This document shows, piece by piece, positions 1,687 to 27,399 of a DNA stretch of 64,000 nucleotides (position 1 is its first letter; every line of letters begins with the position of its first letter). Under the pieces are notes generated by a model. The model was not told where the DNA came from and did no database searches. It worked only from the letters and a program-made list of their open reading frames with translations. Origin of the DNA: Macrostomum lignano. Lineage: Eukaryota. Where the stretch lies: the NCBI GenBank assembly GCA_002269645.1, contig NIVC01001020.1, positions 1-64,000 on the forward strand. Reading direction: 5' to 3'. The position numbers were made by a program, and so were the translations under genes.

Positions 1687-4513
1687 TCAGGGCTTCCGAC
1701 AGGCCTGGATTTTGGCGATCGCCCTGCCAATGCCAGGCGAGAGCCACACGTTGAGCAGCCTCTGACGGAACTCGCGCTCCGGCATGCCGGTCCTGATTCG
1801 CCTTCGCCGTAATAAAAACGTTTCGACGCCCCACGTAGTCAGGGCCACAATCCCGAAAACGATGAGAAAAATGAGGGTCACTGTGGCCCCGACCAGCGCT
1901 GCGTTATTCAATGTTCGCAGCACCTTTACCACAATTTCCCCGATTCCGTTAGGCAGCATGACGAGCTGCGATCCTCGCGTCATCAGCTGAAGTGAGGCTC
2001 GTCTGCCATAAATCAGGAAGTTTACAAAGTGCTCAGTTGTTGTTGAACAGATCGTAGCTCTCAAAACCTTGGAACTCTCTGAATCTTGAATCGATCTTCT
2101 CCCAGTCCGGCTCACAGTTGTGCACAACCTTCTCAATGCTGTTGGCTGTTGCAATTCTAAGAAATCCGCGGAACTCCTTGAACCCTTTGTCCTCGCGCTC
2201 AGCTCCGAACTCGTACGTCACGCCTTGTCTGCTACACTGAGCTGAATCCCAGTCGGTGATCACAAAGTGGACATCTTTCTCAACTCCATGCACTCGGCGC
2301 TTCAGCACGATGTGATCCCACCGTCTCAGGTCCGACTTCGTCACTCCGTCTTCGAACTGCAGACTCTCGCAGCTATCTTTGATTTTTGTTAATTCGGTCC
2401 CGAACAGACTCTGCACGCCACGTAGTCCTTCGCAAGACCAGACCATCTTCAGCCCGAAGCAGAAGTCCTTGTCAGTGACCTTGCTGCCTCCTTTGCCAAC
2501 TGAGCCTTTGAAGTCATCGTCCGAGTTAAGAAATGTGCAATCCTGAATCTCATCCAGACGAGACGCACTCGGCTCGACATCCAAGCTGGGGTGCTGCACT
2601 CTGCGGATGATATCTGTGCTGCTAAAGTCCAGAGGCTCCATCCGCACTTTCCGGTATGGAGCATTGTTCTCGTAGATCCGAACTCGCACGATGTCCGAAC
2701 AGCCCGAGACCTTTTGAATGTCTCTCAGAATGGCATCGTGCGTGTAAAATCTCGCAAACTTTTGATACTTGATGTGACATTTACCGAACTCCAGCAGCTG
2801 AGCGGCTGACTCGATAGGCACACAACACTGCTCCCTGTTGCTGGCGTGCCTGATGCTGCACCAACGAGCAAAGTCTCTCGAGCTGTTCCACTGTAGATCA
2901 AACTGCCGTTCACCGATCCGCGACTTTGCTCTGGCAACCACTTGGTCAGGAGAAAAGTGAATTTCAGCAGGCACTTTGTAATCGACTTCAAAGAGTTCAT
3001 CTTCTACTTTAAAGCTTACACTCCTTTCAATGATTTCGTGCGAGTTCTCGCACGGGTTTACTCTGAATTCAGTGTACTCATACATTGCTAAGTCTAATTC
3101 ATACTCGCCAGTAGCCTCTGAAATAACTTTTGGATTTTCTAGAATGGCTGCTCTGGTGTACATCCCGCTGTCTTTCTCTTTCTTGAAGCTGACTATGCTG
3201 CCTCTCTTAAGGCAGCTTGGCTTTTTCACCCTAGTGCGGGTATCAATTGGTCGTTTTGAACCGCCTCCGTAGAGAGAACAGTTCTCTTTGACGTCATTGT
3301 GAACTACAAGTTGTGCTTCAGATTCCCTGTTACCAATGACGTACTTGATCTCCCGGTGTTCACTGACATTCTCAGCGTCATCAATGCTGTACTGCAGAGT
3401 TTCCAGTTTAATCTGCTGAGAGGAGGAGCCCAGCTGCACTCTGAGAACAGCGCGATGTGTTTTTCCTGAGCAGATTATGTCACCAGGACGAAGGTCTCTC
3501 GCTTTTACCTGCTCAATTCGGTTGCTAGTTGGTGACGCTCTTCCATTGAGCAGACTCTGCAACCAATACGTCTCATCTTCTGATTGCGAGCATGAGACCA
3601 CAATCTGCGCAACGTCTTTGCTCGATTTTGGGGACCTGAACGCCAGGTCTTTAATCACGTTTGCCTTCTCAGCGAGTCTTGCCTGATAGGTTTGAGGCAG
3701 TTGGGATCTTCTGGTCTTCAGAGCTGTGTCAGCTTTGAGTTCTTCGCCCGACTTGTTAATGCTTTGGAATTTCGAATTTTTCCAGTCTTCCTCTGCGACA
3801 AGAACTGTGAGCAAGTGCCCGGTGTCATCCAGGTCCGTGACTTTCTTCACCTCTCCGTGAATCGTGCTCCAGCCGAATTTCAAATTCATGTGGTCATTCT
3901 CCTTCACCTGGTGAATCGGATGCTGATCAGACAGGTAGATCGGAACTAGAACTGTATCCAGATGAGTAGAGTTGATCGTCTTGCACCATCTCGCGAACTG
4001 TCCCGAGTTACTCGCCATTCTGCCATAGTTCCGGTCGTTCAGTCGGCTCTCGGCTCTCTGAAGCACCACCTCGGGTGGGTAGCAGCAGCTCTTGGAGAAC
4101 AGCAGGAGTCTGCAGTAGCGACGGCCTGACAGCAGAAATTCCTCTCTCACGACAGTCTTCACCGCTCTGTGCCACCCGTAGTGAAACGCAGTGGCAACAG
4201 TCTTGTCGGCTGTTGTTGTGACTCGTTCGATCAGGATTGTGCGGGGCATGCCGTTATACCTGATCTCCAGCACGTCCGCAGGCTTCAGTTGGTGTAGGTT
4301 GTACTCTGTGATGCTCACCCAGCCTCGCTTTATGGCTTCATCATCTACCACAACATCGGCGTCGGTAGCCAAAGAAATAAACTCATTTTCGTTCAAAAAA
4401 CCGTGGTTGCACAGCAGCGACTCGAGGTCGGTTCCGAGGTTGTGCAGAACAGGTAGGACATCGCTAGCATCGAAGGCTGCGCTAGTGTGAGAGGCTGGCA
4501 GTTTGTGCTGCAT
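1687..4513 (-). pseudogene. Multi-LRAT/HRASLS-domain gene, copy 1, frameshifted at the catalytic Cys codon (or an assembly indel)
   Basis: ORF 4513..2033 ends YDLFNNN*. A second frame (ORF 1687..2154) resumes EHFVNFLIYG plus the hydrophobic tail. Versus copy 2 (AAC TGT GAG) it reads AAC TGA G, a 2-nt deletion at ~2034. Restored length is ~942 aa. Confidence 0.75.
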
Positions 4514-5884
4514 CTGTTGAGTAATAATTTATGCCGGATTTCATGCATTCGTATGGACAAAGAAATATTATAAATCGATTTTTTAGATTTAAAGGGACTT
4601 ATTGAATCGTGAAAAGTAATTTTTTTAATCCATTCCAGGAACAGTTCTACATTAACTTTCGGCAGCAAGCTTGAAGCTAAAGCAAGGCTGGTGTGAGCAG
4701 CAGGGTATTCCACAATCTCAGGTGCATACATTTGGCTGCATCTAACTTTACTGACTAACCAAAGTGTTGAATTAGCAAATCAGCAAAACAAAATCTCAAA
4801 CACAATTGCTGACAGTGCTGCTTGATTCCACTCGTATCTGATCGTGAGGGGGACACAAATATTCAAATAATAGTATTCTCGATCATATTCACGTTTTGAC
4901 TATACTATGACTTTCGATTGCAGCTTAATATAGAGTAAATATACGAGCTAAGTTAAGACTTACTGATGACAAAAATATTTGCCAAATATCCGCGTTCAAA
5001 AAAGAAGAAAAGGTGTCTTCGCTTCCGAAATTTCAGCAGTCACTTTTCCTAATCATTTCAAATTGTTTTGAATATCGTTTTTATAGTCTTAGTGGAGATT
5101 AGCTTATCAAATTACGAAATAAAAACTCACTCTCAACTCCTTGAAAAAGAAGCCTTCTTGATTTTTTTTCGAAACACGACGTCATACGAGCGTATCCAAG
5201 TACAGAAGGCGGTTTCATTTTAATTTGCTACTATTTTATCTCAGAAACTATTGATTTAACGCACCTTTGGGCGTCCGCATGACATGCTTGATAGCTGGCT
5301 TGCGGCTGAATACTTTTGCATTTATCAGTTAGCTAGCGAGATTTTAATCTCTGGTTTTAGCAATTCGGTTTTCGTTACGGTAGATTGGGTACAGTTCTCT
5401 CCACAAATGCAAATGCAGATATGAAAACAAATTGAATGTGCTCGCACCCAAGGTGGATTGAAAGGCTATTCAATGAGTTAAAAATGATTGACTTACTCAA
5501 TAATTTCAGTTAGTCAACGAACACTAACCACTGAAAAGCAGCTAAGAGCAAGCAAAGTCACGATTCTTTACAAGTAACTGCATGGCCCATGCCATGTTGT
5601 TTTATTCTGTTCTCTTCTTAAGATCATATGCATTTTGTACAATTTTCCATAACCTAACTCATTTGCTCGTTTATATTTTCTAAATAATCAGAGTGCTCTT
5701 CAATTGGCAGAGTGACATTATCAGAGTTCTTCCAGAGAGACATCGTTAGAGTGCTTAATATAGCCTGAGGCAAGATTGAAGTAGGAGTTTTCACATTTGT
5801 GTGATAGCATTTAAATACTCCTAGGGAAATCTGAGAGTCATTTTCTAAGAAATATCAGAACGACACAAAAGAAAGTATTAGAGT

Positions 5885-6668
5885 GCTCCCAGAGTGACAT
5901 TGCGGTAGAATCAGATGCTTCTAGAGTAACATTGCAGTAGAATCAGATGCTCCCAGAGTGACATTGCAGTAGAATCAGATGCTCCCAGAGTGACATTGCA
6001 GTAGAATCAGATGCTCCCAGAGTGACATTGCAGTAGAATCAGATGCTCCCAGAGTGACATTGCAGTAGAATCAGATGCTCCCAGAGTGACATTGCAGTAG
6101 AATCAGATGCTTCTAGAGTGACATTGCAGTAGAATCAGATGCTCCCAGAGTGACATTGCAGTAGAATCAGATGCTTCTAGAGTGACATTGCAGTAGAATC
6201 AGATGCTCCCAGAGTGACATTGCAGTAGAATCAGATGCTCCCAGAGTGACATTGCAGTAGAATCAGATGCTCCGAGAGTGACATTGCAGTAGAATCAGAT
6301 GCTCCCAGAGTGACATTGCAGTAGAATCAGAGTGCTCCCAGAGTGACATTTTAGTAGAATCAGATGCTCCCAGAGTGACATTGCAGTAGAATCAGAGTGC
6401 TCCCAGAGTGACATTGCAGTAGAATCAGATGCTTCTATAGTGACATTGCAGTAGAATCAGATGCTCCCAGAGTGACATTGCAGTAGAATCAGATGCTCCC
6501 AGAGTGACATTGTAGTAGAATCAGATGCTCCCAGAGTGACATTGCAGTAGAATCAGATGCTCCCAGAGTGACATTGCAGTAGAATCAGATGCTCCCAGAG
6601 TGACATTGCAGTAGAATCAGATGCTCCCAGAGTGACATTGCAGTAGACTCAGATGCTCCCAGAGTGAC
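5885..6668. repeat. 32-bp minisatellite (CAGAGTGACATTGCAGTAGAATCAGATGCTCC), ~24 copies
   Basis: Near-identical units at period 32 with no spacers. Confidence 0.95.
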
Positions 6669-7997: not shown

Positions 7998-8265
7998 GGG
8001 TTGCAGCCTAGTCGTCAGAGTTGGCGGACTCACGACTTGAAGGTCGGGGGTTCGATTCCCGATTCGACTCGGAACAGTTTGTGTTTTTGAGCAAGACACT
8101 TAACTCTGCATTGCTTCAGTTCCCCCCGTGGAAAAATGGGTACCAACATTAGCTGGGGGAATTGAGGGTGTGGCGACCCCCCCCCCCCAGTCCTTGGACT
8201 GAACAGCCGTATGCAGCCTTCAGATGCTGTCGGTTGCGCATATTTGGGCGGGTGTACTCAATAGT
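7998..8265 (+). mobile_element. tRNA-derived SINE with CORE-like central domain, family 1, copy 1
   Basis: A-box-like TGCAGCCTAGTCG, B-box GGTTCGATTCC, then GAGCAAGACACTTAACTCTGCATTGCTTCAGTT...AAAATGGG resembling the MIR/CORE motif, and a (TTA)-rich tail. A second copy lies at 22681. Confidence 0.75.
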
Positions 8266-8407
8266 AGTTATTATTATAGTGAATGCATTTAGTCCAAAAA
8301 CCAAGTCTTAATAAGCAAAGCATGATACGCTGGCAAAAGTCTGTCGCAGCAATAGAATCCAGTCTGCGACCAACCTATAGCATGTAAAATATTTCAGTTC
8401 AAACAAG

Positions 8408-11242
8408 TCAGGGATTTCGGCAAGCTTTAAGATAGGCTATCGCCATTCCGGGCACTGGCGTGAGCCAAGCGTTCAGGATTCGCTGTCGAAATTCATTAAC
8501 TGGCATGCCAGTTCTGATCCGCCTCCGGTGCAGTAAAACTGTTTCCACTCCGCTGGATATAACGGCCACAACAGAAGCTACCCAACTCACAACGAAAGTA
8601 ACCCTTCCAAGCTTTGAGCCCGCAGCAAGGACCCTAGAAAATACTTCCACGAATTCTATTACCCGAGATGATATCGAGCTGATTCCACTGGGTATTCTCA
8701 CGAGGATTGTGCCTCTCGACATCAGCTGAAGAGAAGTGCGTCTGCCATAAATCAGGAAGTTTACAAAGTGCTCACAGTTGTTGTTGAACAGATCGTAGCT
8801 CTCAACACCTTGGAACTCTCTGAATCTTGCATCGATCTTCTCCCAGTCCGGCTCACAGTTGTGAACAACCTTCTCAATGCTGTTGGCTGTTGCAATTCTA
8901 AGAAATCCGTTGAACTCCTTGAACCCTTTGTCCTCGCGCTCAGCTCCGAACTCGTACGTCACGCCTTGTCTGCTACACTGAGCTGGATCCCAGTCGGTGA
9001 TCACAAAGTGGACATCTTTCTCAACTCCATGCACTCGGCGCTTCAACACGATGTGATCCCACCGTCTCAGGTCCGACTTCGTCACTCCGTCTTCGAACTG
9101 CAGACTCTCGCAGCTATCTTTGATTTTTGTTAATTCGGTCCCGAACAGACTCTGCACGCCACGTAGTCCTTCGCGAGACCAGACCGTCCTCAGCCAGAAG
9201 CAGAAGTCCTTGTCAGTGACCTTGCTGCCTCCTTTGCCAACTGAGCCTTTGAAGTCATCGTCCGAGTTAAGAAACGTGCAGTCCTGAATCTCATCCAGAC
9301 GAGACGCACTCGGCTCGACATCCAAGCTGGGGTGCTGCACTCTGCGGATGATATCTGTGCTGCTAAAGTCCAGAGGCTCCATCCGCACTTTCCGGTATGG
9401 AGCATTGTTCTCGTAGATCCGAACTCGCACGATGTCCGAACAGCCGTCTGTCCTATGCGACTCCATCAATAAGACGTCATGAGTGTACACACCAAGCGAC
9501 TTTGTGAACTTGATGTGACCTTTACCGAAATCCAGCAGCTGAGCGGCTGACTCGATAGGCACGCAACACTGCTCCCTGTTGCTGGCGTGCCTGATGCTGC
9601 ACCAACGAGCAAAGTCTTTCGAGCTGTTCCACTGTAGATCAAACTGCCGTTCACCGATCCGCGACTTCGCCCTCGAAACCACTTGGTCAGGAGGAAAGTG
9701 ACGTTCAGCAGGCACCTTGTAACTGACTTCAAAGAGTTCATCTTCTACTTTAAAGCTTACACTCCTTCGAACGATTTCGTGCGAGGTTTTCCACGGGTTT
9801 ACTCTGAATTCAGTGTACTCATACATTGCTAAGTCTAATTCATACTCGCCAGTAGCCTCTGAAATAACTTTCGGATTTTCTAGAACGACTGCTCTGGTGT
9901 ACATCCCGCTGTCTTTCTTTTTCTTGAAGCTGACTATGCTGCCTCTCTTAAGGCAGCTTGGCTTTTTCACCCTAGTATAGATATCAAATGGTCGTTTTGA
10001 ACCGCCTCCGTAGAGAGAACAGTTCTCTTTGACGTCATTGTGAACTACAAGTTTGGCTTCAGATTCCCTGTTACCAATGATGTACTTGATCTCCCGGTGT
10101 TCACTGACATTCTCAGCGTCATCAATGCTGTACTGCAGAGTTTCCAGTTTAATCTGCTGAGAAGAGGAGCCCAGCTGCACTCTGAGAACAGCGCGATGTG
10201 TTTTTCCTGAGCAGATTATGTCACCAGGACGAAGGTCTCTCGCTTTTACCTGCTCAATTCGGTTGCTATTTGGTGATGCTCTTCCATTGAGCAGACTCTG
10301 CAACCAATACGTCTCATCTTCTGATTGCGAGCATGAGACCACAATCTGCGCAACGTCTTTGCTCGACTTTGGTGACCTGAACGCCAGGTCTTTAATCACG
10401 TTTGCCTTCTCAGCGAGTCTTGCCTGATAGGTTTGAGGCAGTTGGGATCTTCTGCTCTTCAGAACTGTGTCAGCATTGAATTCTTCGCCCGACTTGTTAA
10501 TGCTTTGGACTTTAGACTTTTTCCAGTCGTCCTCTGCGACAAGAACTGTGAGCAAGTTCCCGGTGTCACCTAGGTCCTTGACTTCTTTCACCTCTCCGTG
10601 AATCGTGCTCCAGCCGAATTTCAAATTCATGTGGTCATTCTCCTTCACCTGGTGAATCGGATGCTGATCAGACAGGTAGATCGGAACTAGAACTGTATCC
10701 AGATGAGTAGAGTCGATCGTCTTACACCATCTCGCGAACTGTCCCGAGTTGCTCTGCATTCTGTCATAGTTCCGGTCGTTCAGTCGGCTCTCGGCTCTCT
10801 GAAGCACCACCTCGGATGGGTAGCAGCAGCTCTTGGAGAACAGCAGGAGTCTGCAGTAGCGACGGCCTGACAGCAGAAATTCCTCTCTCACGACAGTCTT
10901 CACCGCTCTGTGCCACCCGTAGTGAAACGCAGTGGCAACAGTCTTGTCGGCTGTTGTTGTGACTCTTTCGATCAGGATTGTGTGGGGCATGCCGTTATAC
11001 CTGATCTCCAGCACATCCGCAGGCTTCAGTTGGTGCATATTGTCGTCATCTAGCCTTACCCAGCCTCGAATTTTATCTTCATCATTTAGTTCAATTTCGG
11101 TGTCGGTGCCAGCGCCAGCTGTTCTGTTCGAGTCGCTCTGGGGTAACAATTGGATTTCGCGCTCGTCCATGACCAGATCGTCCAGCGGCTCCTCGATGTA
11201 GGCGTCTTCGCCACCCCGTAGAGCTGCCAGTTCTTGTTCCAT
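8408..11242 (-). CDS. Multi-LRAT/HRASLS (permuted NlpC/P60) repeat protein, copy 2, intact, ~944 aa, with C-terminal hydrophobic segment
   Basis: Single ORF from the ATG at 11242 (the track start 11266 is TTG). Terminal module: LRRWDHIVL..VHFVI..YDLFNNNCEHFVNFLIYG. Upstream degenerate modules end RAESRLNDRNY..NSGQFARWC, SSKDVAQI, RAKSRIGERQFDLQWNSSKDFARWC and TDKDFCFW. Confidence 0.85.
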   Translation of the reverse strand: MEQELAALRGGEDAYIEEPLDDLVMDEREIQLLPQSDSNRTAGAGTDTEIELNDEDKIRGWVRLDDDNMHQLKPADVLEIRYNGMPHTILIERVTTTADKTVATAFHYGWHRAVKTVVREEFLLSGRRYCRLLLFSKSCCYPSEVVLQRAESRLNDRNYDRMQSNSGQFARWCKTIDSTHLDTVLVPIYLSDQHPIHQVKENDHMNLKFGWSTIHGEVKEVKDLGDTGNLLTVLVAEDDWKKSKVQSINKSGEEFNADTVLKSRRSQLPQTYQARLAEKANVIKDLAFRSPKSSKDVAQIVVSCSQSEDETYWLQSLLNGRASPNSNRIEQVKARDLRPGDIICSGKTHRAVLRVQLGSSSQQIKLETLQYSIDDAENVSEHREIKYIIGNRESEAKLVVHNDVKENCSLYGGGSKRPFDIYTRVKKPSCLKRGSIVSFKKKKDSGMYTRAVVLENPKVISEATGEYELDLAMYEYTEFRVNPWKTSHEIVRRSVSFKVEDELFEVSYKVPAERHFPPDQVVSRAKSRIGERQFDLQWNSSKDFARWCSIRHASNREQCCVPIESAAQLLDFGKGHIKFTKSLGVYTHDVLLMESHRTDGCSDIVRVRIYENNAPYRKVRMEPLDFSSTDIIRRVQHPSLDVEPSASRLDEIQDCTFLNSDDDFKGSVGKGGSKVTDKDFCFWLRTVWSREGLRGVQSLFGTELTKIKDSCESLQFEDGVTKSDLRRWDHIVLKRRVHGVEKDVHFVITDWDPAQCSRQGVTYEFGAEREDKGFKEFNGFLRIATANSIEKVVHNCEPDWEKIDARFREFQGVESYDLFNNNCEHFVNFLIYGRRTSLQLMSRGTILVRIPSGISSISSRVIEFVEVFSRVLAAGSKLGRVTFVVSWVASVVAVISSGVETVLLHRRRIRTGMPVNEFRQRILNAWLTPVPGMAIAYLKACRNP

Positions 11243-11736
11243 CTGTGTCGTCAAGGTAAAGTTCAAAAGTAGAATTCGCTTTCAAGAAGCATCAGAAATC
11301 TGTTTAAAATCATTGAGAACCCTAAAAGGCTGTACTTGCGTGACAATATGGTAGCCGGTGCTTCATCTACATGTAGCTGCTTTGTTGCATACGTGAGCTG
11401 CTTGAAAACGTGAGAAAAGCTTTTCCTTCTTTGGACAGGGCGACTTAGTGAATGAGAAAAGTTTAAATTTGCACAGTTTTTTAGTGCATAATTTATCTAC
11501 TAACAAAACAGTACCTCGACTGTCCGTTGCTTTGCATAACAAGTAGGAATTAAAGTTCCCTTGTTGGGAATAATAGCTTCGAAATATGCGTTTGCACAAT
11601 GCGGTGCTTCTCTTATGACACAAAAATATTTTAGTAGATCCGCTATCTGGGCTAGGAAAAATCAATAAGTGTTTTTCATCCAGATAGTATTTGTCATTTA
11701 CTATTCAATAGATGTGACCTTGGATTTCGGGAGGCA

Positions 11737-11985
11737 GGGCAGCTCGGTGGTTGATAAGTCGGACTCTCGTGCCCACGACCCCAGGTTCGATTCCGTTCGC
11801 GGCCACATCCATTGTGGATTCACACTCATGAGAGCCAACCCTTGCGCACACAGAGACTGTACATCCATGATAACAAGAAAGTCAGAGCCCTGAGTTAGCG
11901 TGTGCATGAGCACCCTTCTACTGCAGGCATAGTACAGTACAGTATTTGCGCACTTGTTTGTGCTCATGCTCAGGAATCAGTGGAC
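11737..11985 (+). mobile_element. tRNA-derived SINE, family 2, copy 1
   Basis: tRNA-like head GGCAGCTCGGTGG...GGTTCGATTCC. Body motifs ATTCACAC..ATGA.AGCCAACCC, AGAAAGTCAG and AGCGTGTGCATGAG are shared with minus-strand copies at ~24660 and ~30085. Confidence 0.65.
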
Positions 11986-12511
11986 TCCTGACGAATTCAG
12001 ATTTTCGATAACGCTAGGCATACAGAAAATTGCGTTACGAGTATGGGGGATATCAAGGCTGAGAGGCACTTCGAGCACTCACCGAATTAGCGAATACAGT
12101 CGAATTCAAAGCAGAATTTCTGAATCGAAAACTTCCTACCAGTTCAGCACTGGCAAAAGAAATAAAGTAGCTCGACTTAATATCCTTGAGGTGTGGGCAA
12201 AAATCCTTAAACTGCTTGCGCTTTTGTATTGGTTGGAGCAAAGCAGCTGGCTTTAGTTCCTTCTGAAAGGAATAATCATTTATGCGTCATATCTATTCAA
12301 GGAAAAAAATAAGGAACCTCTTAGTTCCTTATTTCAAAGATCTAAAACTTTTCTCACTTCCTGATACTAATATTACGATTAGCTAAGTAAACAAGAAAGT
12401 TCTCCTTAAGAGTGCTAATAATAAACCTCGATCGTATTTTGGAGCTGATGATAATACTATAAAATATTGAAGAAAATAACTACTTAAAGAAATTATGAGA
12501 ATCAAACAAAT

Positions 12512-12527: not shown

Positions 12528-12544
12528 CGCCCCCGGGTGGGCTC

Positions 12545-12581
<37 letters not shown>

Positions 12582-12601
12582 GCCGATTGCGCCACGGAGG
12601 C
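12528..12601 (-). tRNA. tRNA-Asn(GTT): tRNA-Asn, anticodon GTT
   Basis: GCCTCCGTGGCGCAATCGGCTAGCGCGTTCGGCTGTTAACCGAAAGGTTGGTGGTTCGAGCCCACCCGGGGGCG, 74 nt, intact cloverleaf, nearly identical to canonical eukaryotic tRNA-Asn. Confidence 0.97.
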
Positions 12602-13785: not shown

Positions 13786-15126
13786 TCAAGGGACGAGCGG
13801 CCTCAACAAAAACACACAAAAAATGGCTACGGTGATCAAGCAGCCGATGATAGCCATCAGTCGTTCCAAGGCGACCGCAGCGATCTGCCAGTCCGAGCGT
13901 CGCTCTCCGGAAGCCGCCGCGGGTACCTCATTGGCGTCGAATTTCCTGACCTCAGTGTCGCAGCTTTACGTCTCTTCCTGCTGCGGCTCCGTTCTGCCGT
14001 CCGATCGCCGACTGCAGAGCAGCAGACGTCCGAAGATTTTCACGAAGACAAAGTGTAGACACGACGGCATCGGCTGGGACTCCGGAGCGAAGTGGAATCG
14101 AATGACAACGGAGGTGAGCAGCAGAGACACAGTCGAAAGCACCATGGCCGCCGTGATGAAGGAGGCCACGGCCGGCATCGACTGCGACTTGGGCAGCAGG
14201 CCGTCCAGCAGCAGCAGAAACACAGTGTAGCTCAGCATGATGGAGATGCCGAAGCTCATCTTCTCGCCGGACTCCACAGGCACAAAGAACACCAGTACCT
14301 GGAGCAGCGTGAGCAGCAGCAGGGGAGTCACCACGTTCAGCATATAGTAGGTGGACACTCGCTCGATCTCCACACGCATCACATAGGTTGACAGAGGAAT
14401 TTTCGACTGGCCTTTGAAAACTTCATAGAGATGGTAGCTCGCAAAGGTGCTTATGTTTAGCAGATTCCATTCGTTATTCTCACCATAACCGGCAACTTCG
14501 TTGTACTCCATAGTTGGAGGCAGCAGAGGATGTCCCTTCTTCAGAGAAATGCTGTCCAGCGCGCGGCCTTGGTCGGAAGCGTACAGCTCCATGTCACAGA
14601 CGTGCCGATCAAACGGAAAGCGGCTCATGTCGAAGCGGCAGGTGAACTCAAGCTCCTTTATCCAGGCGACTGACATCAGGGACTTGCTGGGCGACACGGA
14701 TGTAATGTAGGACGGGCACTGAGGACTCAGCAGCATGTTGTCTCCCATGCCGTTGTAGACAAACAAGAGCGGATACCAGGTCTGGCCCATGTCCCAGTCC
14801 AACACGGTGACGTTGCCGAACTTCCCTGGCTCCCAGGTGAGTCGTTCTTCGAACCAATGTGCGTATACTGCAACAGAAACTCCAATGCTCTGCTTGGAGC
14901 TGTCCACGGACACTATCTGACCGAGCATTGTCACCAAAGACACATTCAATTTCTGTTTCGGATTCAGAATGGGTCTCAGTGACGGACTAAAGTTCGTGAT
15001 GTTGCTTTTCAGATACTGCAGCAATTCGAATTGGAAATCTCTGGCAGCATCTCCAGATTGAAATTCTGTACTCAGGATAGCGACTATCTCAACAAACAAG
15101 AATAGTATTTTTTGCTGAGACAACAT
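13786..15126 (-). CDS. Cys-loop ligand-gated ion channel subunit (nAChR/5-HT3-like, cation-type), with in-frame TAA at 13968..13966 before M4
   Basis: Signal peptide from the ATG at 15126; Cys-loop CRFDMSRFPFDRHVC; M1-M3 with the GEK motif before M2. After the TAA the same frame continues for 59 aa including DWQIAAVALERLMAIIGCLITVAIFCVFLL (MA helix/M4) to a TGA at 13786. Confidence 0.85.
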
Positions 15127-15381
15127 GCTATTTTCTGAATTTTTAACTGCCAACGGATTGAATAGGGTGGGAATTCATTGAGGAGGCATAAATGCTTTCG
15201 TTTATATGAGTTAACTCCGTCCCAGAATCGCTTCATCTCCTGTCCAATCAGCGGTGTCTAAAAAATAAGAATAGGATGGCTAACGTTTGAAAGCTACTGA
15301 CCGTCGATCCCGGTGCAAACTAGCTGCGCTGACGACAATATAATAAGTTTGAACGCGGAGAGTGGCTTTTTTGGAAGAGAT

Positions 15382-15394
15382 ACAACAACAACAA

Positions 15395-15442
<48 letters not shown>
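15382..15442. repeat. (CAA)n microsatellite
   Basis: Direct trinucleotide run. Confidence 0.95.
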
Positions 15443-16884
15443 AAGAGACTTGTAAGTCTAAGGAATATACGAGCTAACTAAATACTCAAATAGAATAAAT
15501 TCAAACCCGATGCGAAGTACTTACCGATATAGGAACATCGCCGACCTGGTGGAAGAGATTTGACAGCAGATCCTCTAATAAAACAGGGTCAAGGCATGAT
15601 GGGTTGACGAGGCTGCGGGATGATGGACTCGGACCAGGGTAGATTCATGTCTGAGACTGGAATTCCAGGCTAAAAGCAGATATTGCTTTTTGTATAAATT
15701 ACAATCAATTTTTTGTTTGTTTTCAGGCCTGCGCTTCCAACCATTCTGTGCCTCCAGTTCGCCCATGAATTCGGTCGGCCATACGAAGGGTTCAAAATTT
15801 TGGGAAAACGGTCATATCATTTTCTCAACGTAGCCTCCGACCTGCTGATCCATCAGCAGAGTCGCCACCGGACACAAATATAAAATTTGACCGAGGAGGA
15901 CCTTCTCGCTGGACTTCGAAATGAGTAGACTGAAAGAGTGGCCTCTTGAGCTGGTGAAATGGCCACTCTGACCTTAAGGGCTGGGAGCTGAAATCGACGC
16001 ATAACTGAGTTCAAAGATCCTTAGCGCAATATTTAATTAACACCGGAGTTTCTTGGAAGCCGGCATTTTCAGTTCTGACAGCTCAGCGCAATTGGACGAA
16101 AAAATCTCCTATGCAAAATCTTTCGTTTGTTGAGAGTCTCTCAGATCGGCCATGGCTAAACTACTCGTAGTTGAGGTCTTTGCTAAATCCTCGCCCGCAG
16201 CAGGCCGGGAGTCCCATTTGGTTAACTGTGATTTATTCAAGTGTTCTTCTGCTCAGATGACTGACTGGTGGTGGCTATGGCCTCTAACGTAATACCTTCA
16301 TACACAGTGGCGACTCTGTCAGACTCAAAGCTACGAGTACATATATATACAATGCGCGCACATAAAGGCATGCAGCTGTAGGGTTACTTGGAGATTACGT
16401 CATAATCATGTAACACCATTAATTGGCGCTCGGACTACCACTATACTACGATTCTTTTTCATTGCATGTACAATTAATTGTGCAACTGCAAGAGGCGTAA
16501 GCATAGCTATAGCACCCACTTGAAGCCAAAACGTGCCATTATAACATCAATCGGTGACACCATCGGCAGATAAATCTTCAATTAATAGGGAGACATATTG
16601 AAATCCTTTCTTGAAACTGTTTTTGGAATTGTTAATTTGAGTTTCAGACTCGCCTTTTCATCTTTTCTGATCCCTCCGCACGAGTAATAAAAGTACAACA
16701 TACTCTCTGCCGCGTGACTAATCTGCTCACCCAACCCCATCGCTTTCGACAAATCAAATTTACACATGTAATTAACACAGCGTGAAATTAAGAGGGCGTA
16801 ATTTTCATGTCTCCTAAAAGCAGCTTCTTTCACAACTCCGACAGTTATATCTCTGACAAGCTTAGGGCTAGGGTAAGATTTCTA

Positions 16885-18160
16885 ACTTGATTTGTCGGAG
16901 ATATGAGGTGTCGGAGATATTAGATGTCGGAGATATGAAGTGTCAAAGATGTAAAGAGTCAGAGATATGAGGTGTCGGAGATATGAAGTGTCAGAGATAT
17001 GACGTATCGGAGATATGAAGTGTCGGAGATATGAAGTGTCGGAGATATGAAGTGTCGCAGATATGAGATGTCAGAGATATGAGGTCTTGGAGATATGAAG
17101 TGTCAGAGATGTAAAGAGTCAGAGATATGAGGTGTCGGAGATATGAAGTGTCGGAGATATGAGGTGTCGGAGATATGAAGTGTCGGAGATATGAAGTGTC
17201 GGAGATATGAGGTGTCGGAGATATGAAGTGTCGGAGATATGAAGTGTCAGAGATATGAAGTGTCAGAGATATGACGTGTTGGAGATATGAAGTGTCAGAG
17301 ATGTAAAGAGTCAGAGATTTGAGGTGTCGGAGATATGAGGTGTCGGAGATATGAGGTGTCGGAGATATGAAGTGTCGGAGATATGAAGTGTCGGAGATAT
17401 GAAGTGTCGGAGATATGAAGTGTCGGAGATATGAAGTGTCGGAGATATGAAGTGTCGGAGATATGAAGTGTCGGAGATATGAAGTGTCAGAGATGTAAAG
17501 AGTCAGAGATTTGAGGTGTCGGAGATATGAGGTGTCGGAGATATGAAGTGTCGGAGATATGAAGTGTCAAAGATGTAAAGAGTCAGAGATATGAGGTGTC
17601 GGAGATATGAAGTGTCAAAGATGTAAAGAGTCAGAGATATGAGGTGTCGGAGATATGAAGTGTCGGAGATATGAGGTGTCGGAGATATGAGGTGTCAGAG
17701 TAATGACGTGTTGGAGATATGAAGTGTCGGAGATATGAAGTGTCAGAGATATGAGGTGTCAGAGATATGACGTGTTGGAGATATGAGGTGTCGGAGATAT
17801 GAAGTGTCGGAGATATGAGGTGTCAGAGATATGAAGTGTCGGAGATATGAAGTGTCGGAGATATGAGGTGTCGGAGATATGACGTGTTGGAGATATGAGG
17901 TGTCGGAGATATGAAGTGTCGGAGATATGAAGTGTCGGAGATATGAGGTGTCGGAGATATGAGGTGTCAGAGTAATGACGTGTTGGAGATATGAAGTGTC
18001 GGAGATATGAAGTGTCAGAGATATGAAGTGTCAGAGATATGAAGTGTCAGAGATATGAAGTGTCAGAGATATGAAGTGTCAGAGATATGAGGTGTCGGAG
18101 ATATGAGGTGTCGGAGATATGAGGTGTCAGAGATGTAAAGAGTCAGAGATATGAGGTGTC
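16885..18160. repeat. 16-bp minisatellite (GTGTCGGAGATATGAA) with recurring variant units
   Basis: Period 16 over ~1.3 kb. Confidence 0.95.
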
Positions 18161-18766
18161 GTGAGGTGTACCTTAACCGCTTGTACGCATTTCATCACGT
18201 GACTACTTTCCATCTCTATTTTCTATCCACCTCCCCCTTATCTTTGTATTAGAGCCTGAAATAAGTGTGGAGTGGATTTATGGCATGGCATCTGTGCTGG
18301 GAAAATGCACTCTGACTCTACCATAGGACTGCTACCAAACCAAAGCAGGGCTTTGTAATTTGTAAATTGTCGATTCTAACAGGAACATTTAGTCATGAAT
18401 GTACATTTTTTGAAGGCGGCTTCTTCGGCTGAACTCACCCAGTGTGTCAGTGTACACTGCCGGGGAGGGGTTTTGGGGTGGCGGGTGCGGGGGACCCCAA
18501 TGTGCGCCAGGCCCCCTGTGGAGGAAGGATAGAGAGGGGCGAAGTTCAACAAGCCGCTACAATAAACGCCTTACAAAGGAAGGCAGCAGGAAGGACAAGT
18601 TCAACCCAATGAGGTTGGTTGTGTATTATCAGGCCGTTAATAGTTAGGGCAGCAGGCTTTAGGCTCTGGCTTCGCTCTCAGCAAGACAGATACATAAACC
18701 TGCCCATACCTTGGCCAGTCAGAAATTCAGAAATTCAGAATTCAGAAATTTAGTTAGAGAAAAATA

Positions 18767-21700
18767 ATGCAAGCACTTTATCTCAGCTTAGTCATCGCTC
18801 CCCTGTTGTGGACCGGCTGCTCCGCTACCACACTGTACTACCGGCCACTGCCACAGAGCTACTACAAGCCAGCACGAGATGCCGCCTGCAACCTGTCTCT
18901 GGTAGAAAGCATACCCGAGAATCTCACCTATCCTAATTCTACAGCGCCGAAGCACTTGAGCACCTATGCCGCCTACCGATTCTTGGTTGGGAGTGCAGTT
19001 AATGAGCTCAAGGTCGCCTCGCTATACTGGAGCCTGAGGGGTCCGGATATTATGCAGAATCCGGGACATCTGGCTGCTGAGGTAATTTTCTATCTAGCAT
19101 ATAAACCGGAATTCAAAATCTAAGAAAGCATATGACTGGCATGACCCTTTGACCTCCTCTGGATGGCGGGGCAGTGTCCCGTCTCCATGTCATTTCCTCT
19201 GCCCCACGCTCCAATTTCAAAGTTTCACCCCCTCCCTCCCACTCCATAGTCGCTAATATTATTTAACCATGATAAGAAGTGACAGACATTCCTGCATCAC
19301 TAACTTAGTGGCTACAAATGCATTTCTGACAAAAATATCGATTTTTTCAACTTCTGCAGGGTGAGGAGCTCCTAGCAGCTCTGGTGAAGCGCAGCCAGCA
19401 GCTGCCAGTTCGCATTGTGAACAACATCGGCGGCCTGGCATTCAACCACAGCGACCTGCAGCTGCTGGCCCGCCAGCCCAAAGTCAGCATAGCGTGGCTG
19501 AATGTCACCGGCCTGCTGGGGAGCGGAGTGCAGCACGCCAAGCTGATGCTGGCTGATGGACAACACGGATACGTGGGCAGCTCAAACATTGACTGGAGAT
19601 CCTTGACTCAGGTGAGGCACAGCTCCAGCATTGACTGGAGGTCCTTGACTCAGGTGAGGCACAGCTCTAGTCCAGCATTGACTGGAGATCCTTGACTCAG
19701 GTGAGGCACAGCTCCAACATTGACTGGAGATCCTTGACTCAGGTGAGGCACAGCCCCAGCATTGACTGGAGGTCCTTGACTCAGGTGAGGCACAGCTCCA
19801 GCATTGACTGGAGGTCCTTGACTCAGGTGAGGCACAGCTCCAGCATTGACTGGAGGTCCTTTAGTCTTGTTTTCTATGATTCTAAGTTCCAAGAGTTTCA
19901 GCTATTCCCAATAATCTCTCAGGTCTCAGCAGTAATCCACCAGATCTTTCGAAATATCCCCACCAGAGTTCTTTAGCACATTAAGCCATTAGCACAAAAG
20001 GCCATTAAGCCCAACAGTGCACAAACGCTGATCCGCAGGTGAAGGAGCTGGGTCTGCTAATGACTGGCTGCCCCAGCCTGGTGCGCGAGCTGGACAAAAG
20101 CTTTGAGGCCTTTTGGCTGACTGCCATCGAGAACCAGGTGCCCCACAGCTGGCCGGAGAACCTCACGGCCAGCATCAATGCCAGCCACCCGCTTGTGACC
20201 TCGATCGGAGACTACAAGTATTCCATCTACCTAGGGGTGAGATTTCCATCTGCTCGGTTTGAAATTCAAAATCTACTCAAGTGACATTAATAATGTACTC
20301 AAGTGAAATTGAGAATGTACTCAAGTGAAATTGAGAATGTACTCAAATGAGATTAAGAATGTACTCAAATGAGATTAAGAATGTACTCAAGTGAGAATAA
20401 GAATGTACTCAAGTGATATTGAGAATGTACTCAAATGAGATTAAGAATGTACTGAAGTGGGATTCAGAATGTACTCAAATGAGATTGAGAATGTACTCAA
20501 ATGAGATTAAGAATGTACTGAAGTGAGATTCTCCCTCCCCCAGATATCCCCCGCCCCGCTGACGCCGCCGCGCTGGTCGCGCGACATCGACGCCATAGTG
20601 AGCGCCATTCTGTCAGCGCGCAGTTATGTCCACGTCGCTGTGATGGACTACGAAGCTGAGCTGTCGGACGGCCACTCGCACAGCTACTGGGGCAACATCG
20701 ACAACGCCCTGCGGACTGCCGCCTTCAATGGCGTGAAAGTGCGCTTCCTGTTGTCGTACTGGAAGCATTCAAACAAATTCAATGAGCTGTTCCTCAAATC
20801 TCTCACCGTCCTCAACACCAGCAGCACCTTTATTGAAGGGGTGAGTGGCGCTCGAGGCAGTTCTCAGGGCCTTCGTTTAATCCGAAGCCTTGGTTATGAT
20901 TATCCAAATCCTGATCCCGATTCCACATCCTGATCCCGATTCCACATCCTGATCCCGATTCCACATCCTGATCCCGATTCCACATCCTGATCCCGATTCC
21001 ACGCCCTGATCCCGATTCCACATCCTGATCCCGATTCCACATCCTGATCCCGATTCCACCTTATCCGAATTCTAAATCGCTATCCCAAAACTTCGATCCG
21101 GATGTCAGTTGTTTGTAAAAGCCAAAAGCCAAAACAAACTCCTTATTATTCCGTCATTTTCTCCGCAGAAATTTTTCAAAGTTCCGTTTTACACGAAGGA
21201 GCAGCGCAGCATTCCGTACGCCAGGGTGAACCACAACAAGTACATGGTCACCGAGGATACCGCCGTCATCTGTGAGTTCTGGACTTTTTGAGATGAGTTA
21301 AAATAGTTTCGGTAAAAAAAGCCTTCAACTCGCCCAGACGATGGGGCGATTTTGAAACCATCGAGAAGATTTCAGCGCTCACTCCAGAGAATCGCCCGTC
21401 AGCCACCCCAGAGAATCGCCACTCAGCCACCCCAGAGAATCGCCACTCAGCCACCCCAGAGAATCGGCCCCAGTCACCCCAGAGAATCGCCCCTCAGTAA
21501 CTCCAGAGAATCGCCCCTCATTCACCCCAGAGAATCGCCCCTCATTCACCCCAGAGAATCGCCCCCCAGTCACCTCAAAGAATCGCCCCTCAGTCACCCC
21601 AGAGAATTGCCCCCCAGTCACCTCAGAGAATCGCCCCCCAGTCACCTCAAAGAATCGCCCCTCAGTCACCCCAGAGAATTGCCCCTCATTCACCCCAGAG

Positions 21701-26775: not shown

Positions 26776-27399
26776 GGGCCTTAGTGGTCCTTGCTAATGC
26801 ATTATCACCTTGGCAATAAATTCCAACACACATCATTGCTTTTTTGTTAATCATCTTCAGAAATACACAAAAATATTTTCCAATCATTTCACCCTGGCAA
26901 TAAGTCAAACATGTCCGGTTCTGGATTCATTCTGCATGCCGCAAGTTTGCGCTGGCATTTGCTTTCGGATTAGAAAGTCAGCGCTGGCGAAGATCCCCTG
27001 CTGAGTCCTCGAAATCCCCCGGAAAGCCTCGGGTGCTGAAGCGCTGAGGTGTCTAATCCGAGGCTCAGGCTTCCCTGTTTGGGATTTAATCCCCTCGCCC
27101 GGCCAAGGTGAAGATTTTCAACGCCAGCGGACAAGCCTCGGCCAGAAGCGGGACAAGTGCACTTGATCAGAGCCGGAGCGGAGGGCCTCAAGCGGTCTCG
27201 AGGCGAAGCGTTAATGGACCGCCTTTGTGCCGCGCCTCAAGCGGAAATTAACTTTCCCATGCCATATTAGCAGTTTCGTGTAAGGGCTAAATTAAACCCG
27301 TGTTGACTCTGCCACTGTTTTGATGATGAGTGAAAATGCAGCTTCACTTCAAAATTTGCAAGCCTGGGCTTCATCATTTCAGTTCTTTGGAGGACAGCC

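What the first reader, a model, noticed from the sequence alone, without database searches (positions are those of the whole stretch)
8408..11242. Polymeric LRAT/PLAAT protein: about five dead modules stacked on one active acyltransferase and a membrane anchor
Seen: the 944-aa ORF repeats the H-box start (LKPADVLEI, VKENDHMNL, LRPGDII, LKRGSIVSF, GKGHIKF, LRRWDHIVL) and the NC-box end (NSGQFARWC, SSKDVAQI, NSSKDFARWC, TDKDFCFW, NNCEHFVNF). Only the last module has Cys (TGT at 8776-8774), and a hydrophobic tail follows it. Established: LRAT/HRASLS (PLAAT) enzymes are permuted NlpC/P60 proteins, normally with one such domain plus a C-terminal membrane anchor; FAM84/LRATD proteins carry Cys-to-Ser and are considered inactive. 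Inference: an intronless, duplicated chain of pseudo-enzyme modules ending in one live phospholipase A/acyltransferase could be a lineage-specific sensor-effector (decoy/recognition array gating a membrane-remodelling enzyme). I know of no described family with this architecture.
Basis: partly seen in the sequence, partly recalled or inferred. Interest (0 to 1): 0.82.

Follow-up and report, generated by a model that had tools for sequence, protein, structure and literature searches.

The report
Flatworm protein with six LRAT modules
A flatworm (Macrostomum lignano) gene encodes a 944-residue membrane-anchored protein made of five degenerate copies of the LRAT/PLAAT lipid-enzyme domain followed by one copy that keeps the catalytic cysteine; the layout is real and absent from the papers I could search, but it is already in databases as an uncharacterised protein and has relatives in mussels and an acorn worm.

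Summary
Window 8408-11242 (-) is an intact 944-codon ORF on Macrostomum lignano contig NIVC01001020.1. It matches UniProt A0A1I8H137, "LRAT domain-containing protein", apart from one residue and 60 extra N-terminal residues that map to a spliced upstream exon. Only the last module has Cys at the NC-box position (C823, codon 8776-8774), and a hydrophobic helix follows it.

Support differs by module:
- **M1, M4, M6:** LRAT by Pfam and by profile-profile comparison (99% or more).
- **M5:** 92%, full length and in register.
- **M3:** a half module with only the beta part (HMM E 2.6e-9 to the N-half of a mussel LRAT module).
- **M2:** shown only for its H-box half (about 75%).

The protein looks like two copies of a three-module unit.

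Three caveats apply:
- The "live" module lacks the third triad histidine (Tyr763), so activity is inferred.
- The gene has a 5'UTR intron.
- The layout is not flatworm-specific. At least 11 M. lignano clusters share it. Bivalves carry one live plus up to 10 dead modules in the mirrored order, and an acorn worm has dead-dead-dead-live plus anchor.

The sensor/decoy idea is untested. I found no papers on any of these proteins. I rate it a new variant of a known kind, of moderate interest.

The parts
8408..11242 (-). Coding sequence, 944 codons plus TGA stop (8410-8408). Single coding exon.
   Evidence: Identical except G225D to residues 61-1004 of UniRef100_A0A1I8H137.
12083..12262 (-). Upstream non-coding exon (5'UTR) of the transcript-based model. 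It joins directly to the ATG at 11242.
   Evidence: tblastn of the extra 60 N-terminal residues of P0006/P0125. Sequence read.
11243..12082 (-). 5'UTR intron of 840 nt. GT donor at 12082-12081 and AG acceptor at 11244-11243.
11072..11242 (-). Acidic N-terminal region, aa 1-57. No signal peptide by eye. Poorly conserved (18% identity among paralogs) and modelled as disordered.
10688..11071 (-). Module M1 (aa 58-185): dead LRAT domain. Keeps both histidines (H87, H107). S166 sits at the Cys position (Ala, Gly or Pro in the more distant paralogs).
   Evidence: Pfam LRAT 21 bits. hhalign 99.2-99.9%. Columns.
10277..10687 (-). Module M2 (aa 186-322): the most divergent dead module. The H-box half (VKENDHMNL...IHGEV, H215) is LRAT-like. 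The NC-box half (SSKDVAQIV) is inferred only.
   Evidence: hhalign 74-76% over about 40 columns. 0/40 shuffles reach the score. 8/8 outside hits in register. AF2 secondary-structure pattern. No Pfam or PDB hit.
9983..10276 (-). Module M3 (aa 323-420): half module. It has the H-box and five beta strands up to the conserved 'VVHN...C.LYGGG' and no NC-box helices.
   Evidence: The M3 HMM hits the N-half of mussel LRAT module P0071 327-447 at E 2.6e-9. hhalign 84%. 20/20 hits in register.
9575..9982 (-). Module M4 (aa 421-556): dead LRAT domain. The H-box His is replaced by R450 in both window copies. S541 sits at the Cys position.
   Evidence: Pfam LRAT 24.1 bits. M1-M4 z = 14. hhalign 99.4-99.7%..
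9143..9574 (-). Module M5 (aa 557-700): dead LRAT domain. H588 is kept. D677 sits at the Cys position (Ser in most paralogs). Its last helix runs on into the linker.
   Evidence: hhalign 91.9%, E 6.9e-7, 116 columns in register. 0/40 shuffles. 9/9 in register.
8717..9100 (-). Module M6 (aa 715-842): the only module with the NCEHF box. H745 is codon 9010-9008, Y763 (third-triad position) is codon 8956-8954, and C823 is codon 8776-8774.
   Evidence: Pfam LRAT 29.6 bits against a cutoff of 24.3. The M6 family profile hits PLAAT2 (4dpz) at E 3.3e-7 with the Cys aligned. hhalign 99.8%.
8411..8716 (-). C-terminal tail (aa 843-944). Amphipathic helices, then one hydrophobic helix (aa ~879-903, nt 8534-8608), then HRRRIR. 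Paralogs carry one or two further hydrophobic segments that this copy lacks.
1687..4513 (-). Tandem paralog (copy B, P0001). It has the same six modules, but a 2-bp (TG) deletion in the Cys codon creates TGA at 2035-2033. The tail stays open in the shifted frame (1687-2046).

Best explanation
This is an expressed Macrostomum lignano gene for a membrane-anchored member of the LRAT/PLAAT (H-box/NC-domain, circularly permuted NlpC/P60) family. Its polypeptide is an array of six LRAT-derived modules.

Shown:
- Four full-length modules without the cysteine (M1, M2, M4, M5) and one half module (M3) precede a single module (M6). M6 keeps the H-box histidine (H745) and the NCEHF cysteine (C823).
- One hydrophobic helix follows M6.
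- The M1-M2-M3 triplet behaves as a duplication unit. It is duplicated once more in paralog P0002.
- The gene belongs to a tandemly arranged M. lignano family of at least 11 clusters at 90% identity. Every module is conserved across paralogs that are only 22-40% identical.
- More distant relatives with one live module and many dead ones exist in bivalves and a hemichordate.

Inferred:
- The array probably arose by duplication of a three-module unit, so that M1-M2-M3 corresponds to M4-M5-M6.
- The tail inserts into an organelle or plasma membrane with the modules in the cytosol, since there is no signal peptide.
- C823 and H745 would form an acyl-thioester with an acyl chain of a membrane glycerophospholipid, then pass it to water or to an acceptor. 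That is PLA1/2 or acyl-transfer chemistry as in PLAATs.
- The five Cys-less modules are non-catalytic. They most likely act as a binding, regulatory or spacer scaffold for the one catalytic domain, as tandem pseudoenzyme domains do elsewhere.
For: Organism and gene model:
- Contig NIVC01001020.1 of GCA_002269645.1.
- UniProt A0A1I8H137 has the same ORF plus a spliced 5'UTR exon.

LRAT identity:
- Pfam PF04970 at 62 bits for the whole protein; M1 21, M4 24.1 and M6 29.6 bits on their own.
- M6 profile against PLAAT2/PLAAT3 structures, E 3.3e-7 to 1.3e-5, with the Cys aligned.
- Profile-profile and shuffle tests for all six modules.
- Transitive, in-register HMM hits.

Structure:
- The AF2 model built with the family alignment has mean pLDDT 66.6. 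It repeats the pattern of five beta strands then two helices six times, with M3 lacking the helices.
- Foldseek against viral models finds a CHAP/C51 peptidase (prob 1.00) and a Catovirus LRAT (prob 0.99, E 0.068).

Other points:
- Catalytic columns.
- Triplet unit: P0002 aa 49-405 is colinear with query aa 58-410 at E 1.6e-33, and the M1/M2 junction matches the M4/M5 junction.
- Conservation per module among paralogs is 0.23-0.38, against 0.18-0.20 for the N-terminus and the tail.
- Hydrophobic helix.
- Relatives and module counts.
Against: - The third triad residue of M6 is Tyr763, not His or Asn. In PLAAT3, any triad substitution abolishes activity (PMC11989323).
- The NC-box helix of M6 is modelled at low confidence (pLDDT 40-60).
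- The whole-model Foldseek search against the PDB gave nothing below E 0.2. Its top hits were tandem Tudor domains, not PLAATs.
- M2, M3 and M5 give no Pfam or PDB sequence hit in any paralog.
- Short-term dN/dS is only moderately below 1. It is 0.5-0.66 between the two window copies and among three homeologs, from few substitutions.
- The neighbouring copy is broken exactly at the Cys codon.
- No expression pattern, localisation or activity data exist.
Confidence: 0.7

Rival explanations
1. The whole protein is a pseudoenzyme. M6 is also catalytically dead because the third triad residue is lost, and the protein acts as a non-enzymatic, membrane-tethered lipid- or protein-binding scaffold.
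For: - The third-triad position is Tyr or Phe in every family member.
- PLAAT3 loses activity when any triad residue is substituted (PMC11989323).
- The family tolerates members with no Cys at all: P0008, and the truncated P0001.
Against: - The NNCEHF box and H745 are kept in 10 of 12 aligned family members (9 of 10 for H745, since P0002 has Asp there) despite 22-40% overall identity.
- M6 is the best conserved module (0.38).
- LRAT mutagenesis, and the Phe at this position in PPPDE1, suggest the third residue can be dispensable (PMC3142127).
Confidence: 0.2
2. One reading: the dead modules form a recognition or decoy array that gates a membrane-disrupting effector, for example in innate immunity.
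For: Circumstantial only:
- A lineage-expanded, tandemly arrayed family with fast-diverging ends and broken copies.
- Parallel expansions in bivalves.
- From general knowledge, PLAAT3 is used by picornaviruses and some picornaviruses encode H-box/NC proteins.
Against: - No test here bears on it.
- The dead modules are fairly conserved rather than hypervariable.
- dN/dS is below 1 in every module.
- There are no known immune domains in the protein.
Confidence: 0.1
3. The locus is a decaying duplicate (pseudogene) in a repeat-rich contig end, and the long ORF is residual.
For: - The tandem copy has a frameshift at the catalytic codon.
- dN/dS is about 0.6.
- The window is full of satellites.
Against: - An intact 944-codon ORF.
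- A transcript-based database model with a spliced 5'UTR and the same ORF.
- All modules are conserved across distant paralogs, with invariant residues in each.
Confidence: 0.06
4. The N-terminal modules are Tudor/Agenet/SH3-like beta-barrel reader domains rather than LRAT derivatives.
For: - The top PDB Foldseek hits are tandem Tudor domains of UHRF1 and SETDB1.
- UniProt names the M1-only fragment 'Agenet-like domain-containing protein'.
Against: - Those Foldseek hits have E > 0.2 and TM-scores (TMt, normalised by the target) of at most 0.26 for the tandem-Tudor hits.
- M1 and M4 match Pfam LRAT, including the NC-box helix.
- M1, M4 and M5 align full length to LRAT profiles. All six modules start with the H-box in register.
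Confidence: 0.04

Closest known systems
PLAAT1-5 (HRASLS / H-rev107 family phospholipase A/acyltransferases)
   Same: - M6 has the H-box His and the NCEHF Cys in the permuted order.
- A hydrophobic C-terminal segment follows it, which is the PLAAT layout (PMC11989323).
- The M6 profile hits PLAAT2 and PLAAT3 structures at E 3e-7 to 1e-5.
   Different: - PLAATs are 162-279 aa with one domain. This protein is 944 aa with five extra Cys-less modules.
- The third triad residue is Tyr, not His or Asn.
- The His context is VHFVIT rather than HW[AG][LIV]Y.
- There is no proline-rich N-terminus.
- About 40 residues follow the hydrophobic helix.
LRATD1/2 (FAM84A/B), vertebrate LRAT-domain proteins with an NSE box
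   Same: An LRAT domain in which the nucleophile Cys is replaced (Ser in M1, M2 and M4 of this copy) and which is presumed non-catalytic (PMC3184775).
   Different: - FAM84 proteins have a single domain and no live partner domain or anchor.
- Here the residue at the Cys position is not fixed (Ser, Ala, Gly, Asp, Arg or Lys among paralogs).
- PMC3184775 places the FAM84 substitution after the amphioxus-vertebrate split, so the losses here are probably independent. Orthology was not tested.
Uncharacterised bivalve multi-LRAT proteins (e.g. Potamilus KAK3603616.1, Mytilus XP_076105740.1, Sinanodonta KAL3874825.1)
   Same: One live LRAT domain, hydrophobic segments and 3-10 Cys-less LRAT modules in one chain. 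Their dead modules are the best outside matches of M1, M3 and M4.
   Different: The order is mirrored: live domain first, then 2-3 hydrophobic segments, then the dead modules. Those dead modules are more uniform (NRSxHF) and keep both histidines. No M2- or M5-type divergent modules are recognised in them.
Ptychodera flava XP_070560329.1 (uncharacterised, 705 aa)
   Same: Three dead modules (NNDEHF, NDNEHF, NENRHF), then one live NNCEHF module, then a hydrophobic tail. This is the same order as here.
   Different: It is shorter and only distantly similar (27-36% in local stretches). Whether it shares ancestry with the flatworm arrangement or converged on it is unresolved.
LRAT (lecithin:retinol acyltransferase) and C. 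elegans EGL-26
   Same: The same Pfam family. Both are membrane-associated permuted NlpC/P60 domains acting on, or near, membrane lipids (PMC3142127, PMC3184775).
   Different: Both have a single domain. The LRAT-specific insertion and its HYGIY context are absent here. No retinoid link is implied.

Membership tests
LRAT-like family (Pfam PF04970; permuted NlpC/P60, H-box/NC domain) | Significant match to the family profile above the curated cutoff | tested here: met
   Whole protein 62 bits against a cutoff of 24.3. M6 alone 29.6 bits. M4 24.1 and M1 21.1 bits fall just under the cutoff on their own.
LRAT-like family (Pfam PF04970; permuted NlpC/P60, H-box/NC domain) | Permuted order: H-box histidine N-terminal to the NC-box cysteine at the start of a helix | tested here: met
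   M6 has H745 then C823. The Cys aligns with the catalytic Cys of PLAAT2 and PLAAT3. AF2 places C823 at the start of helix 823-832.
LRAT-like family (Pfam PF04970; permuted NlpC/P60, H-box/NC domain) | Complete Cys-His-His (or Cys-His-Asn) catalytic triad | tested here: not met
   The third position is Y763 (T762 in the hhalign register). It is Tyr or Phe in all 12 family members. The Cys-His pair is present in M6 only.
PLAAT/HRASLS subfamily | Small single-domain protein (162-279 aa in human) with a C-terminal hydrophobic domain | tested here: not met
   The hydrophobic helix is present. The protein is 944 aa with six modules.
PLAAT/HRASLS subfamily | HW[AG][LIV]Y context around the H-box histidine (PMC3184775) | tested here: not met
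   M6 reads VHFVIT.
PLAAT/HRASLS subfamily | Ca-independent PLA1/2 or N-/O-acyltransferase activity dependent on the Cys | not testable with these tools
   Needs an enzyme assay.
FAM84/LRATD pseudoenzymes | NSE box (Cys to Ser) in an otherwise conserved single LRAT domain | tested here: inconclusive
   M1 (NSGQF), M2 (SSKDV) and M4 (SSKDF) have Ser at the Cys position in this copy. The position varies among paralogs, and the following Glu and His are lost. Orthology to vertebrate LRATD was not tested.
Tudor/Agenet-like readers | Significant structural or profile match to Tudor/Agenet barrels | tested here: not met
   Foldseek hits have E > 0.2. There is no Pfam Tudor or Agenet hit at E up to 10.

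The most novel reading that the evidence does not exclude
Proteins with one live LRAT module and an array of dead ones may form a widespread but undescribed class of invertebrate membrane proteins, seen in flatworm, bivalves, hemichordate and possibly amphioxus. In this class the pseudo-LRAT modules would act as ligand- or damage-sensing (or decoy) units. They would gate a tethered PLAAT-like membrane-lysing or acyl-transferring domain, giving an innate-immune or organelle-clearance effector.
Probability: 0.1. Interest if true: 0.8.

Novelty: new variant of a known kind. Interest (0 to 1): 0.5.

Why it matters
PLAAT and LRAT enzymes are treated as small single-domain lipid enzymes, and FAM84/LRATD as isolated dead relatives. 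This locus and its relatives show something different. In several invertebrate phyla, one cysteine-bearing LRAT domain is repeatedly built into the same chain as 3-10 conserved Cys-less copies and a membrane anchor.

If the dead modules regulate or target the live one, this would be a natural system for studying how PLAAT-type membrane remodelling is controlled. It would also be a new case of pseudoenzyme domains in tandem with an enzyme. Macrostomum lignano is a transgenic, RNAi-amenable model, so the question can be tested. If M6 is inactive too, the family is simply an expanded set of lipid-domain-derived scaffolds of unknown role.

Tried and rejected
1. AF2 on the single sequence gave pLDDT 31.7 and was unusable.
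2. Whole-model Foldseek against the PDB gave no hit below E 0.2, with Tudor-like barrels on top. The viral library gave weak but sensible hits to CHAP and to a giant-virus LRAT.
3. The search for homologous proteins, with the protein and then with the family alignment, returned only the neighbouring paralog. The exhaustive phmmer search was what found the family.
4. Sequence profiles of M2, M3 and M5 against the PDB, and Pfam scans of every paralog's M2, M3 and M5, gave no LRAT hit.
5. Plain pairwise alignment of modules detects only M1-M4. hhalign between the shallow module profiles gave low probabilities except M1-M4 and M1-M3. Deeper target profiles built from the hits were needed.
6. hhalign could not confirm M3-M6 homology or the NC-box half of M2.
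7. dN/dS gave about 0.5-0.65, between the two window copies and among three homeologs. There were too few substitutions to separate modules. Gene conversion and a possibly dead copy also confound the window pair.
8. Literature searches for multi-LRAT proteins, the Mlig gene IDs, and Macrostomum plus LRAT found nothing.
Full report
**Origin and gene model.** The window is the first 64 kb of Macrostomum lignano contig NIVC01001020.1 (assembly GCA_002269645.1). The neighbouring paralog P0001 maps to record positions identical to window positions (taxonomy). The target ORF runs from ATG at 11242 to TGA at 8410-8408 on the minus strand, 944 codons without interruption.

UniRef100_A0A1I8H137 ("LRAT domain-containing protein", 1004 aa) equals this ORF with one substitution (G225D), preceded by 60 residues. 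Those residues map to window 12262-12083. They join the ATG across an 840-nt GT..AG intron. So the coding sequence is a single exon, but the gene has a spliced 5'UTR. An independent, apparently transcript-derived model carries the same reading frame, including the catalytic box and the tail.

**Checking the observation.** Pfam LRAT (PF04970) hits the whole protein at E 8.7e-17 in three stretches.

Scanned separately, the modules gave these Pfam results:

| Module | Pfam LRAT score |
|---|---|
| M1 (aa 58-185) | 21 bits |
| M4 (aa 421-556) | 24.1 bits |
| M6 (aa 715-842) | 29.6 bits |
| M2, M3, M5 | no hit |

Only M1 and M4 are similar by plain alignment (z = 14 against shuffles). Profiles of M2, M3 and M5 find no PLAAT or LRAT structure by sequence. 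No paralog's M2, M3 or M5 hits Pfam LRAT. On sequence-to-profile evidence alone, only three modules would stand.

**Finding relatives.** The word-indexed searches returned only the neighbour. The exhaustive phmmer search found 93 representatives.

- **Full-length relatives are all M. lignano.** P0002-P0005, P0007, P0008 and their cluster mates are 21-37% identical to the query (26-40% by the phmmer listing) and are named only "hypothetical" or "LRAT domain-containing protein". Further M. lignano clusters are P0011, P0021, P0023 and P0040.
- **More distant hits are invertebrate.** They come from Mytilus, Potamilus and Sinanodonta (bivalves), Ptychodera flava (hemichordate) and Branchiostoma.

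The 12-sequence family alignment has invariant residues in every module. Mean pairwise identity among seven non-redundant paralogs is 0.35, 0.23, 0.29, 0.33, 0.35 and 0.38 for M1 to M6. It is 0.18 for the N-terminus and 0.20 for the tail. The Cys-less modules are therefore conserved about as well as the live one, with M2 the least conserved.

**Are M2, M3 and M5 LRAT-derived?** From the outside hits I built an LRAT profile of 71 Cys-bearing domains and a second profile of 144 domains, mostly Cys-less.

hhalign results:

| Module | Probability | Coverage |
|---|---|---|
| M1 | 99.2-99.9% | full length |
| M4 | 99.4-99.7% | full length |
| M6 | 99.8% | full length |
| M5 | 91.9% (E 6.9e-7) | 116 columns; H-box on H-box, DKDFCFW on NCEHFxxW |
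| M3 | 84% | 66 columns: H-box to the fifth strand |
| M2 | 74-76% | about 40 columns: H-box region only |

- None of 40 column shuffles of M2, M3 or M5 scored above 18, against observed scores of 32-41.
- The M3 HMM hits residues 329-400 of P0071 at E 2.6e-9. P0071 is a Logan-assembled relative whose source organism I could not look up. That stretch is exactly the N-terminal part of a module the LRAT profiles cover at 327-447.
- Every weak outside hit of the M2 (8/8), M3 (20/20) and M5 (9/9) HMMs falls on an LRAT module in the expected register.
- The AF2 model made with the family alignment has mean pLDDT 66.6 and beta cores at about 75-89. It repeats one pattern six times: a short strand, three long strands, a short strand, then two helices. 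M3 lacks the helices.
- Whole-model Foldseek was not decisive. The PDB search gave nothing below E 0.2, with tandem Tudor domains and a CHAP endolysin on top. The viral library gave a C51/CHAP peptidase (prob 1.00) and a Catovirus "lecithin retinol acyltransferase" (prob 0.99, E 0.068).

My reading is as follows. M1, M4, M5 and M6 are full LRAT-type modules. M3 is a half module. M2 is LRAT-derived in its first half, and its second half is inferred from the secondary-structure pattern and from the paralogs' DFCLHLTN motif. That motif resembles M5's DFCxWLKT.

**Catalytic residues.**

| Module | H-box His | Second His position | Cys position |
|---|---|---|---|
| M6 | H745 | Y763 (Tyr/Phe family-wide) | C823 (codon 8776-8774) |
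| M1 | H87 | H107 | S166 (Ala/Gly/Pro in the more distant paralogs) |
| M2 | H215 | none | S294 |
| M3 | H349 (Tyr in most paralogs) | Y371 | no NC box |
| M4 | R450 (His in all other paralogs) | Y476 | S541 |
| M5 | H588 | Y610 | D677 (Ser in most paralogs) |

"Active" still needs a caveat. PLAATs use Cys-His-His, or Cys-His-Asn in PLAAT1, and substituting any triad residue kills PLAAT3 (PMC11989323). On the other hand, LRAT mutagenesis and the Phe at this position in PPPDE1 suggest the third residue can be dispensable in permuted NlpC/P60 enzymes (PMC3142127). The M6 family profile aligns C823 with the catalytic Cys of PLAAT2 (4dpz, E 3.3e-7) and PLAAT3.

**Membrane tail.** The only strongly hydrophobic stretch is aa ~879-903 (Kyte-Doolittle 2.07), followed by HRRRIR. 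AF2 models aa 834-942 as helices. Paralogs carry one or two extra hydrophobic segments that this copy lacks. The N-terminus is acidic, with no signal peptide by eye, so the modules are probably cytosolic. That topology is an inference.

**Origin of the array.** In paralog P0002, residues 49-405 are colinear with query residues 58-410 (M1-M2-M3, E 1.6e-33) and with P0002's own second M1-M3 block. The triplet has therefore duplicated as a unit. The M1/M2 junction, with its VPI motif, also matches the M4/M5 junction. M1 is clearly similar to M4. M2 and M5 give weak, reciprocal, in-register matches. M3 and M6 share the VVHN fifth strand, but hhalign does not support that pair. Two copies of a three-module unit is the simplest history. 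This is inferred, not proven.

**Wider distribution.** I counted modules with the combined HMMs in 97 representatives, using L for a live module and d for a dead one.

- The flatworm family is dddddL. P0002 is ddddddddL, and P0001 and P0008 have no live module.
- Bivalve proteins are L followed by 3-8 dead modules; the longest array, 10 dead modules, is in P0073, a Logan-assembled sequence of unknown source. The hydrophobic segments sit after the live domain.
- Ptychodera XP_070560329.1 is dddL plus a hydrophobic tail. Its dead boxes read NNDEHF, NDNEHF and NENRHF.
- In all, 32 of the 97 have one live and at least two dead modules.

So the principle of one live module, several dead ones and a membrane segment is not flatworm-specific, although the six-module version is. 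I found no paper on any of these proteins. An amphioxus survey describes a lineage-specific LRAT-like expansion and defines the NCE and NSE boxes (PMC3184775).

**The neighbouring copy.** Copy B (2033-4513, minus strand; P0001) is 89% identical in protein over aa 37-822. It has a 2-bp TG deletion in the Cys codon (AACTGTGAG to AACTGAG) that creates a stop. The tail remains open in the shifted frame but is only 53% identical.

High nucleotide identity (94.2%) is confined to 8712-11111 against 1973-4371. The ends are much more diverged, which suggests gene conversion or a chimeric duplication. Whether the deletion is real or an assembly error cannot be decided here.

**Selection.** dN/dS is about 0.5-0.66 in every module between the two window copies. 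It is similar among the homeologs P0096, P0095 and P0005, which differ by dS of about 0.02. That is modest constraint, measured with little power. The long-term conservation is the better argument that the dead modules are maintained.

**Mechanism.** I commit to the following, with the steps marked.

- **Shown:** a multi-module LRAT-derived protein with one Cys/His-bearing module next to a hydrophobic helix.
- **Inferred from family knowledge (PMC11989323, PMC3142127):** the helix tethers M6 to a membrane. There, C823 and H745 take an acyl chain from a glycerophospholipid as a thioester and release it to water or an acceptor.
- **Inferred by analogy only:** the five Cys-less modules are non-catalytic and act as a regulatory, binding or spacing scaffold.

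The main rival is that M6 is dead too (about 0.2).

**Verdict.** The protein is a new variant of a known kind. It is uncharacterised and I found no paper on it, but it is already catalogued automatically as an LRAT domain-containing protein, and it is one instance of a broader invertebrate pattern. Interest is moderate (0.5).

Noticed in passing
window 1687-4513 (-): The tandem paralog has a 2-bp TG deletion exactly in the catalytic Cys codon, giving TGA at 2035-2033. The downstream tail is still open in the shifted frame. It could be a soluble all-dead variant, a young pseudogene or an assembly error. NCBI annotates it as an 826-aa protein.
   Followed up: partly
window 8712-11111 vs 1973-4371: The two copies are 94.2% identical in nucleotides only inside this 2.4-kb block. 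The N-terminal coding part and the tail are far more diverged (tail 53% aa identity). This suggests gene conversion or a chimeric duplication.
   Followed up: partly
window 8411-8716 (-) compared with paralogs in alignment A1: This copy's tail lacks roughly 35 residues that paralogs have, including one or two further hydrophobic segments. It probably has one membrane helix where relatives have two or three.
   Followed up: no
window 9893-9895 (-), codon of R450: The H-box histidine of module M4 is Arg in both window copies but His in all ten other family members.
   Followed up: no
L003 (NIVC01001606.1) 8001-10714 and 15331-18714; also contig NIVC01004522.1 (L004 shows only PAA47238): Family members sit as same-strand tandem pairs elsewhere too (P0095 next to P0002; PAA47238 with PAA47239, the latter pair from accession and contig data only). 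The gene models for P0095 and P0005 do not translate colinearly near the 3' end, so an intron was probably called to bridge a frameshift before the membrane tail.
   Followed up: partly
window 12528-12601 (-), 11735-11805 and about 8050-8075: There is a tRNA-Asn(GTT) gene just upstream of the 5'UTR exon. tRNA-like T-arm sequences (GGTTCGATTCC) lie inside the 5'UTR intron and about 350 bases past the stop codon (3' flank). ARAGORN does not call them, so they may be tRNA-derived SINE fragments.
   Followed up: no
whole window, e.g. 32-730, 5884-6668, 16893-18161, 25861-26779, 36100-38505, 48870-49830, 50902-52390: The window is unusually dense in tandem repeats: Tandem Repeats Finder lists 40 rows (some describe the same array) with score of at least 200, periods 4-214. 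Many of the long 'ORFs' in it are just repeat translations.
   Followed up: no
window 13966-15153 (-): A 395-aa single-exon ORF with Neur_chan_LBD (E 1e-23) and Neur_chan_memb (E 1e-20) domains. It is a Cys-loop ligand-gated ion channel subunit next to the LRAT gene.
   Followed up: partly
window 20523-20933 (+): A 136-aa ORF matching the PLD-like domain PLDc_3 (E 3.8e-13). It is probably one exon of a phospholipase-D-family gene.
   Followed up: no
M1 region, window 10688-11071 (-): UniProt names the M1-only fragment (A0A1I8J5N1) 'Agenet-like domain-containing protein', and Foldseek's top (non-significant) PDB hits are tandem Tudor domains. The beta half of these LRAT modules seems to mimic Tudor/Agenet-type barrels closely enough to trigger automatic mis-naming.
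   Followed up: partly
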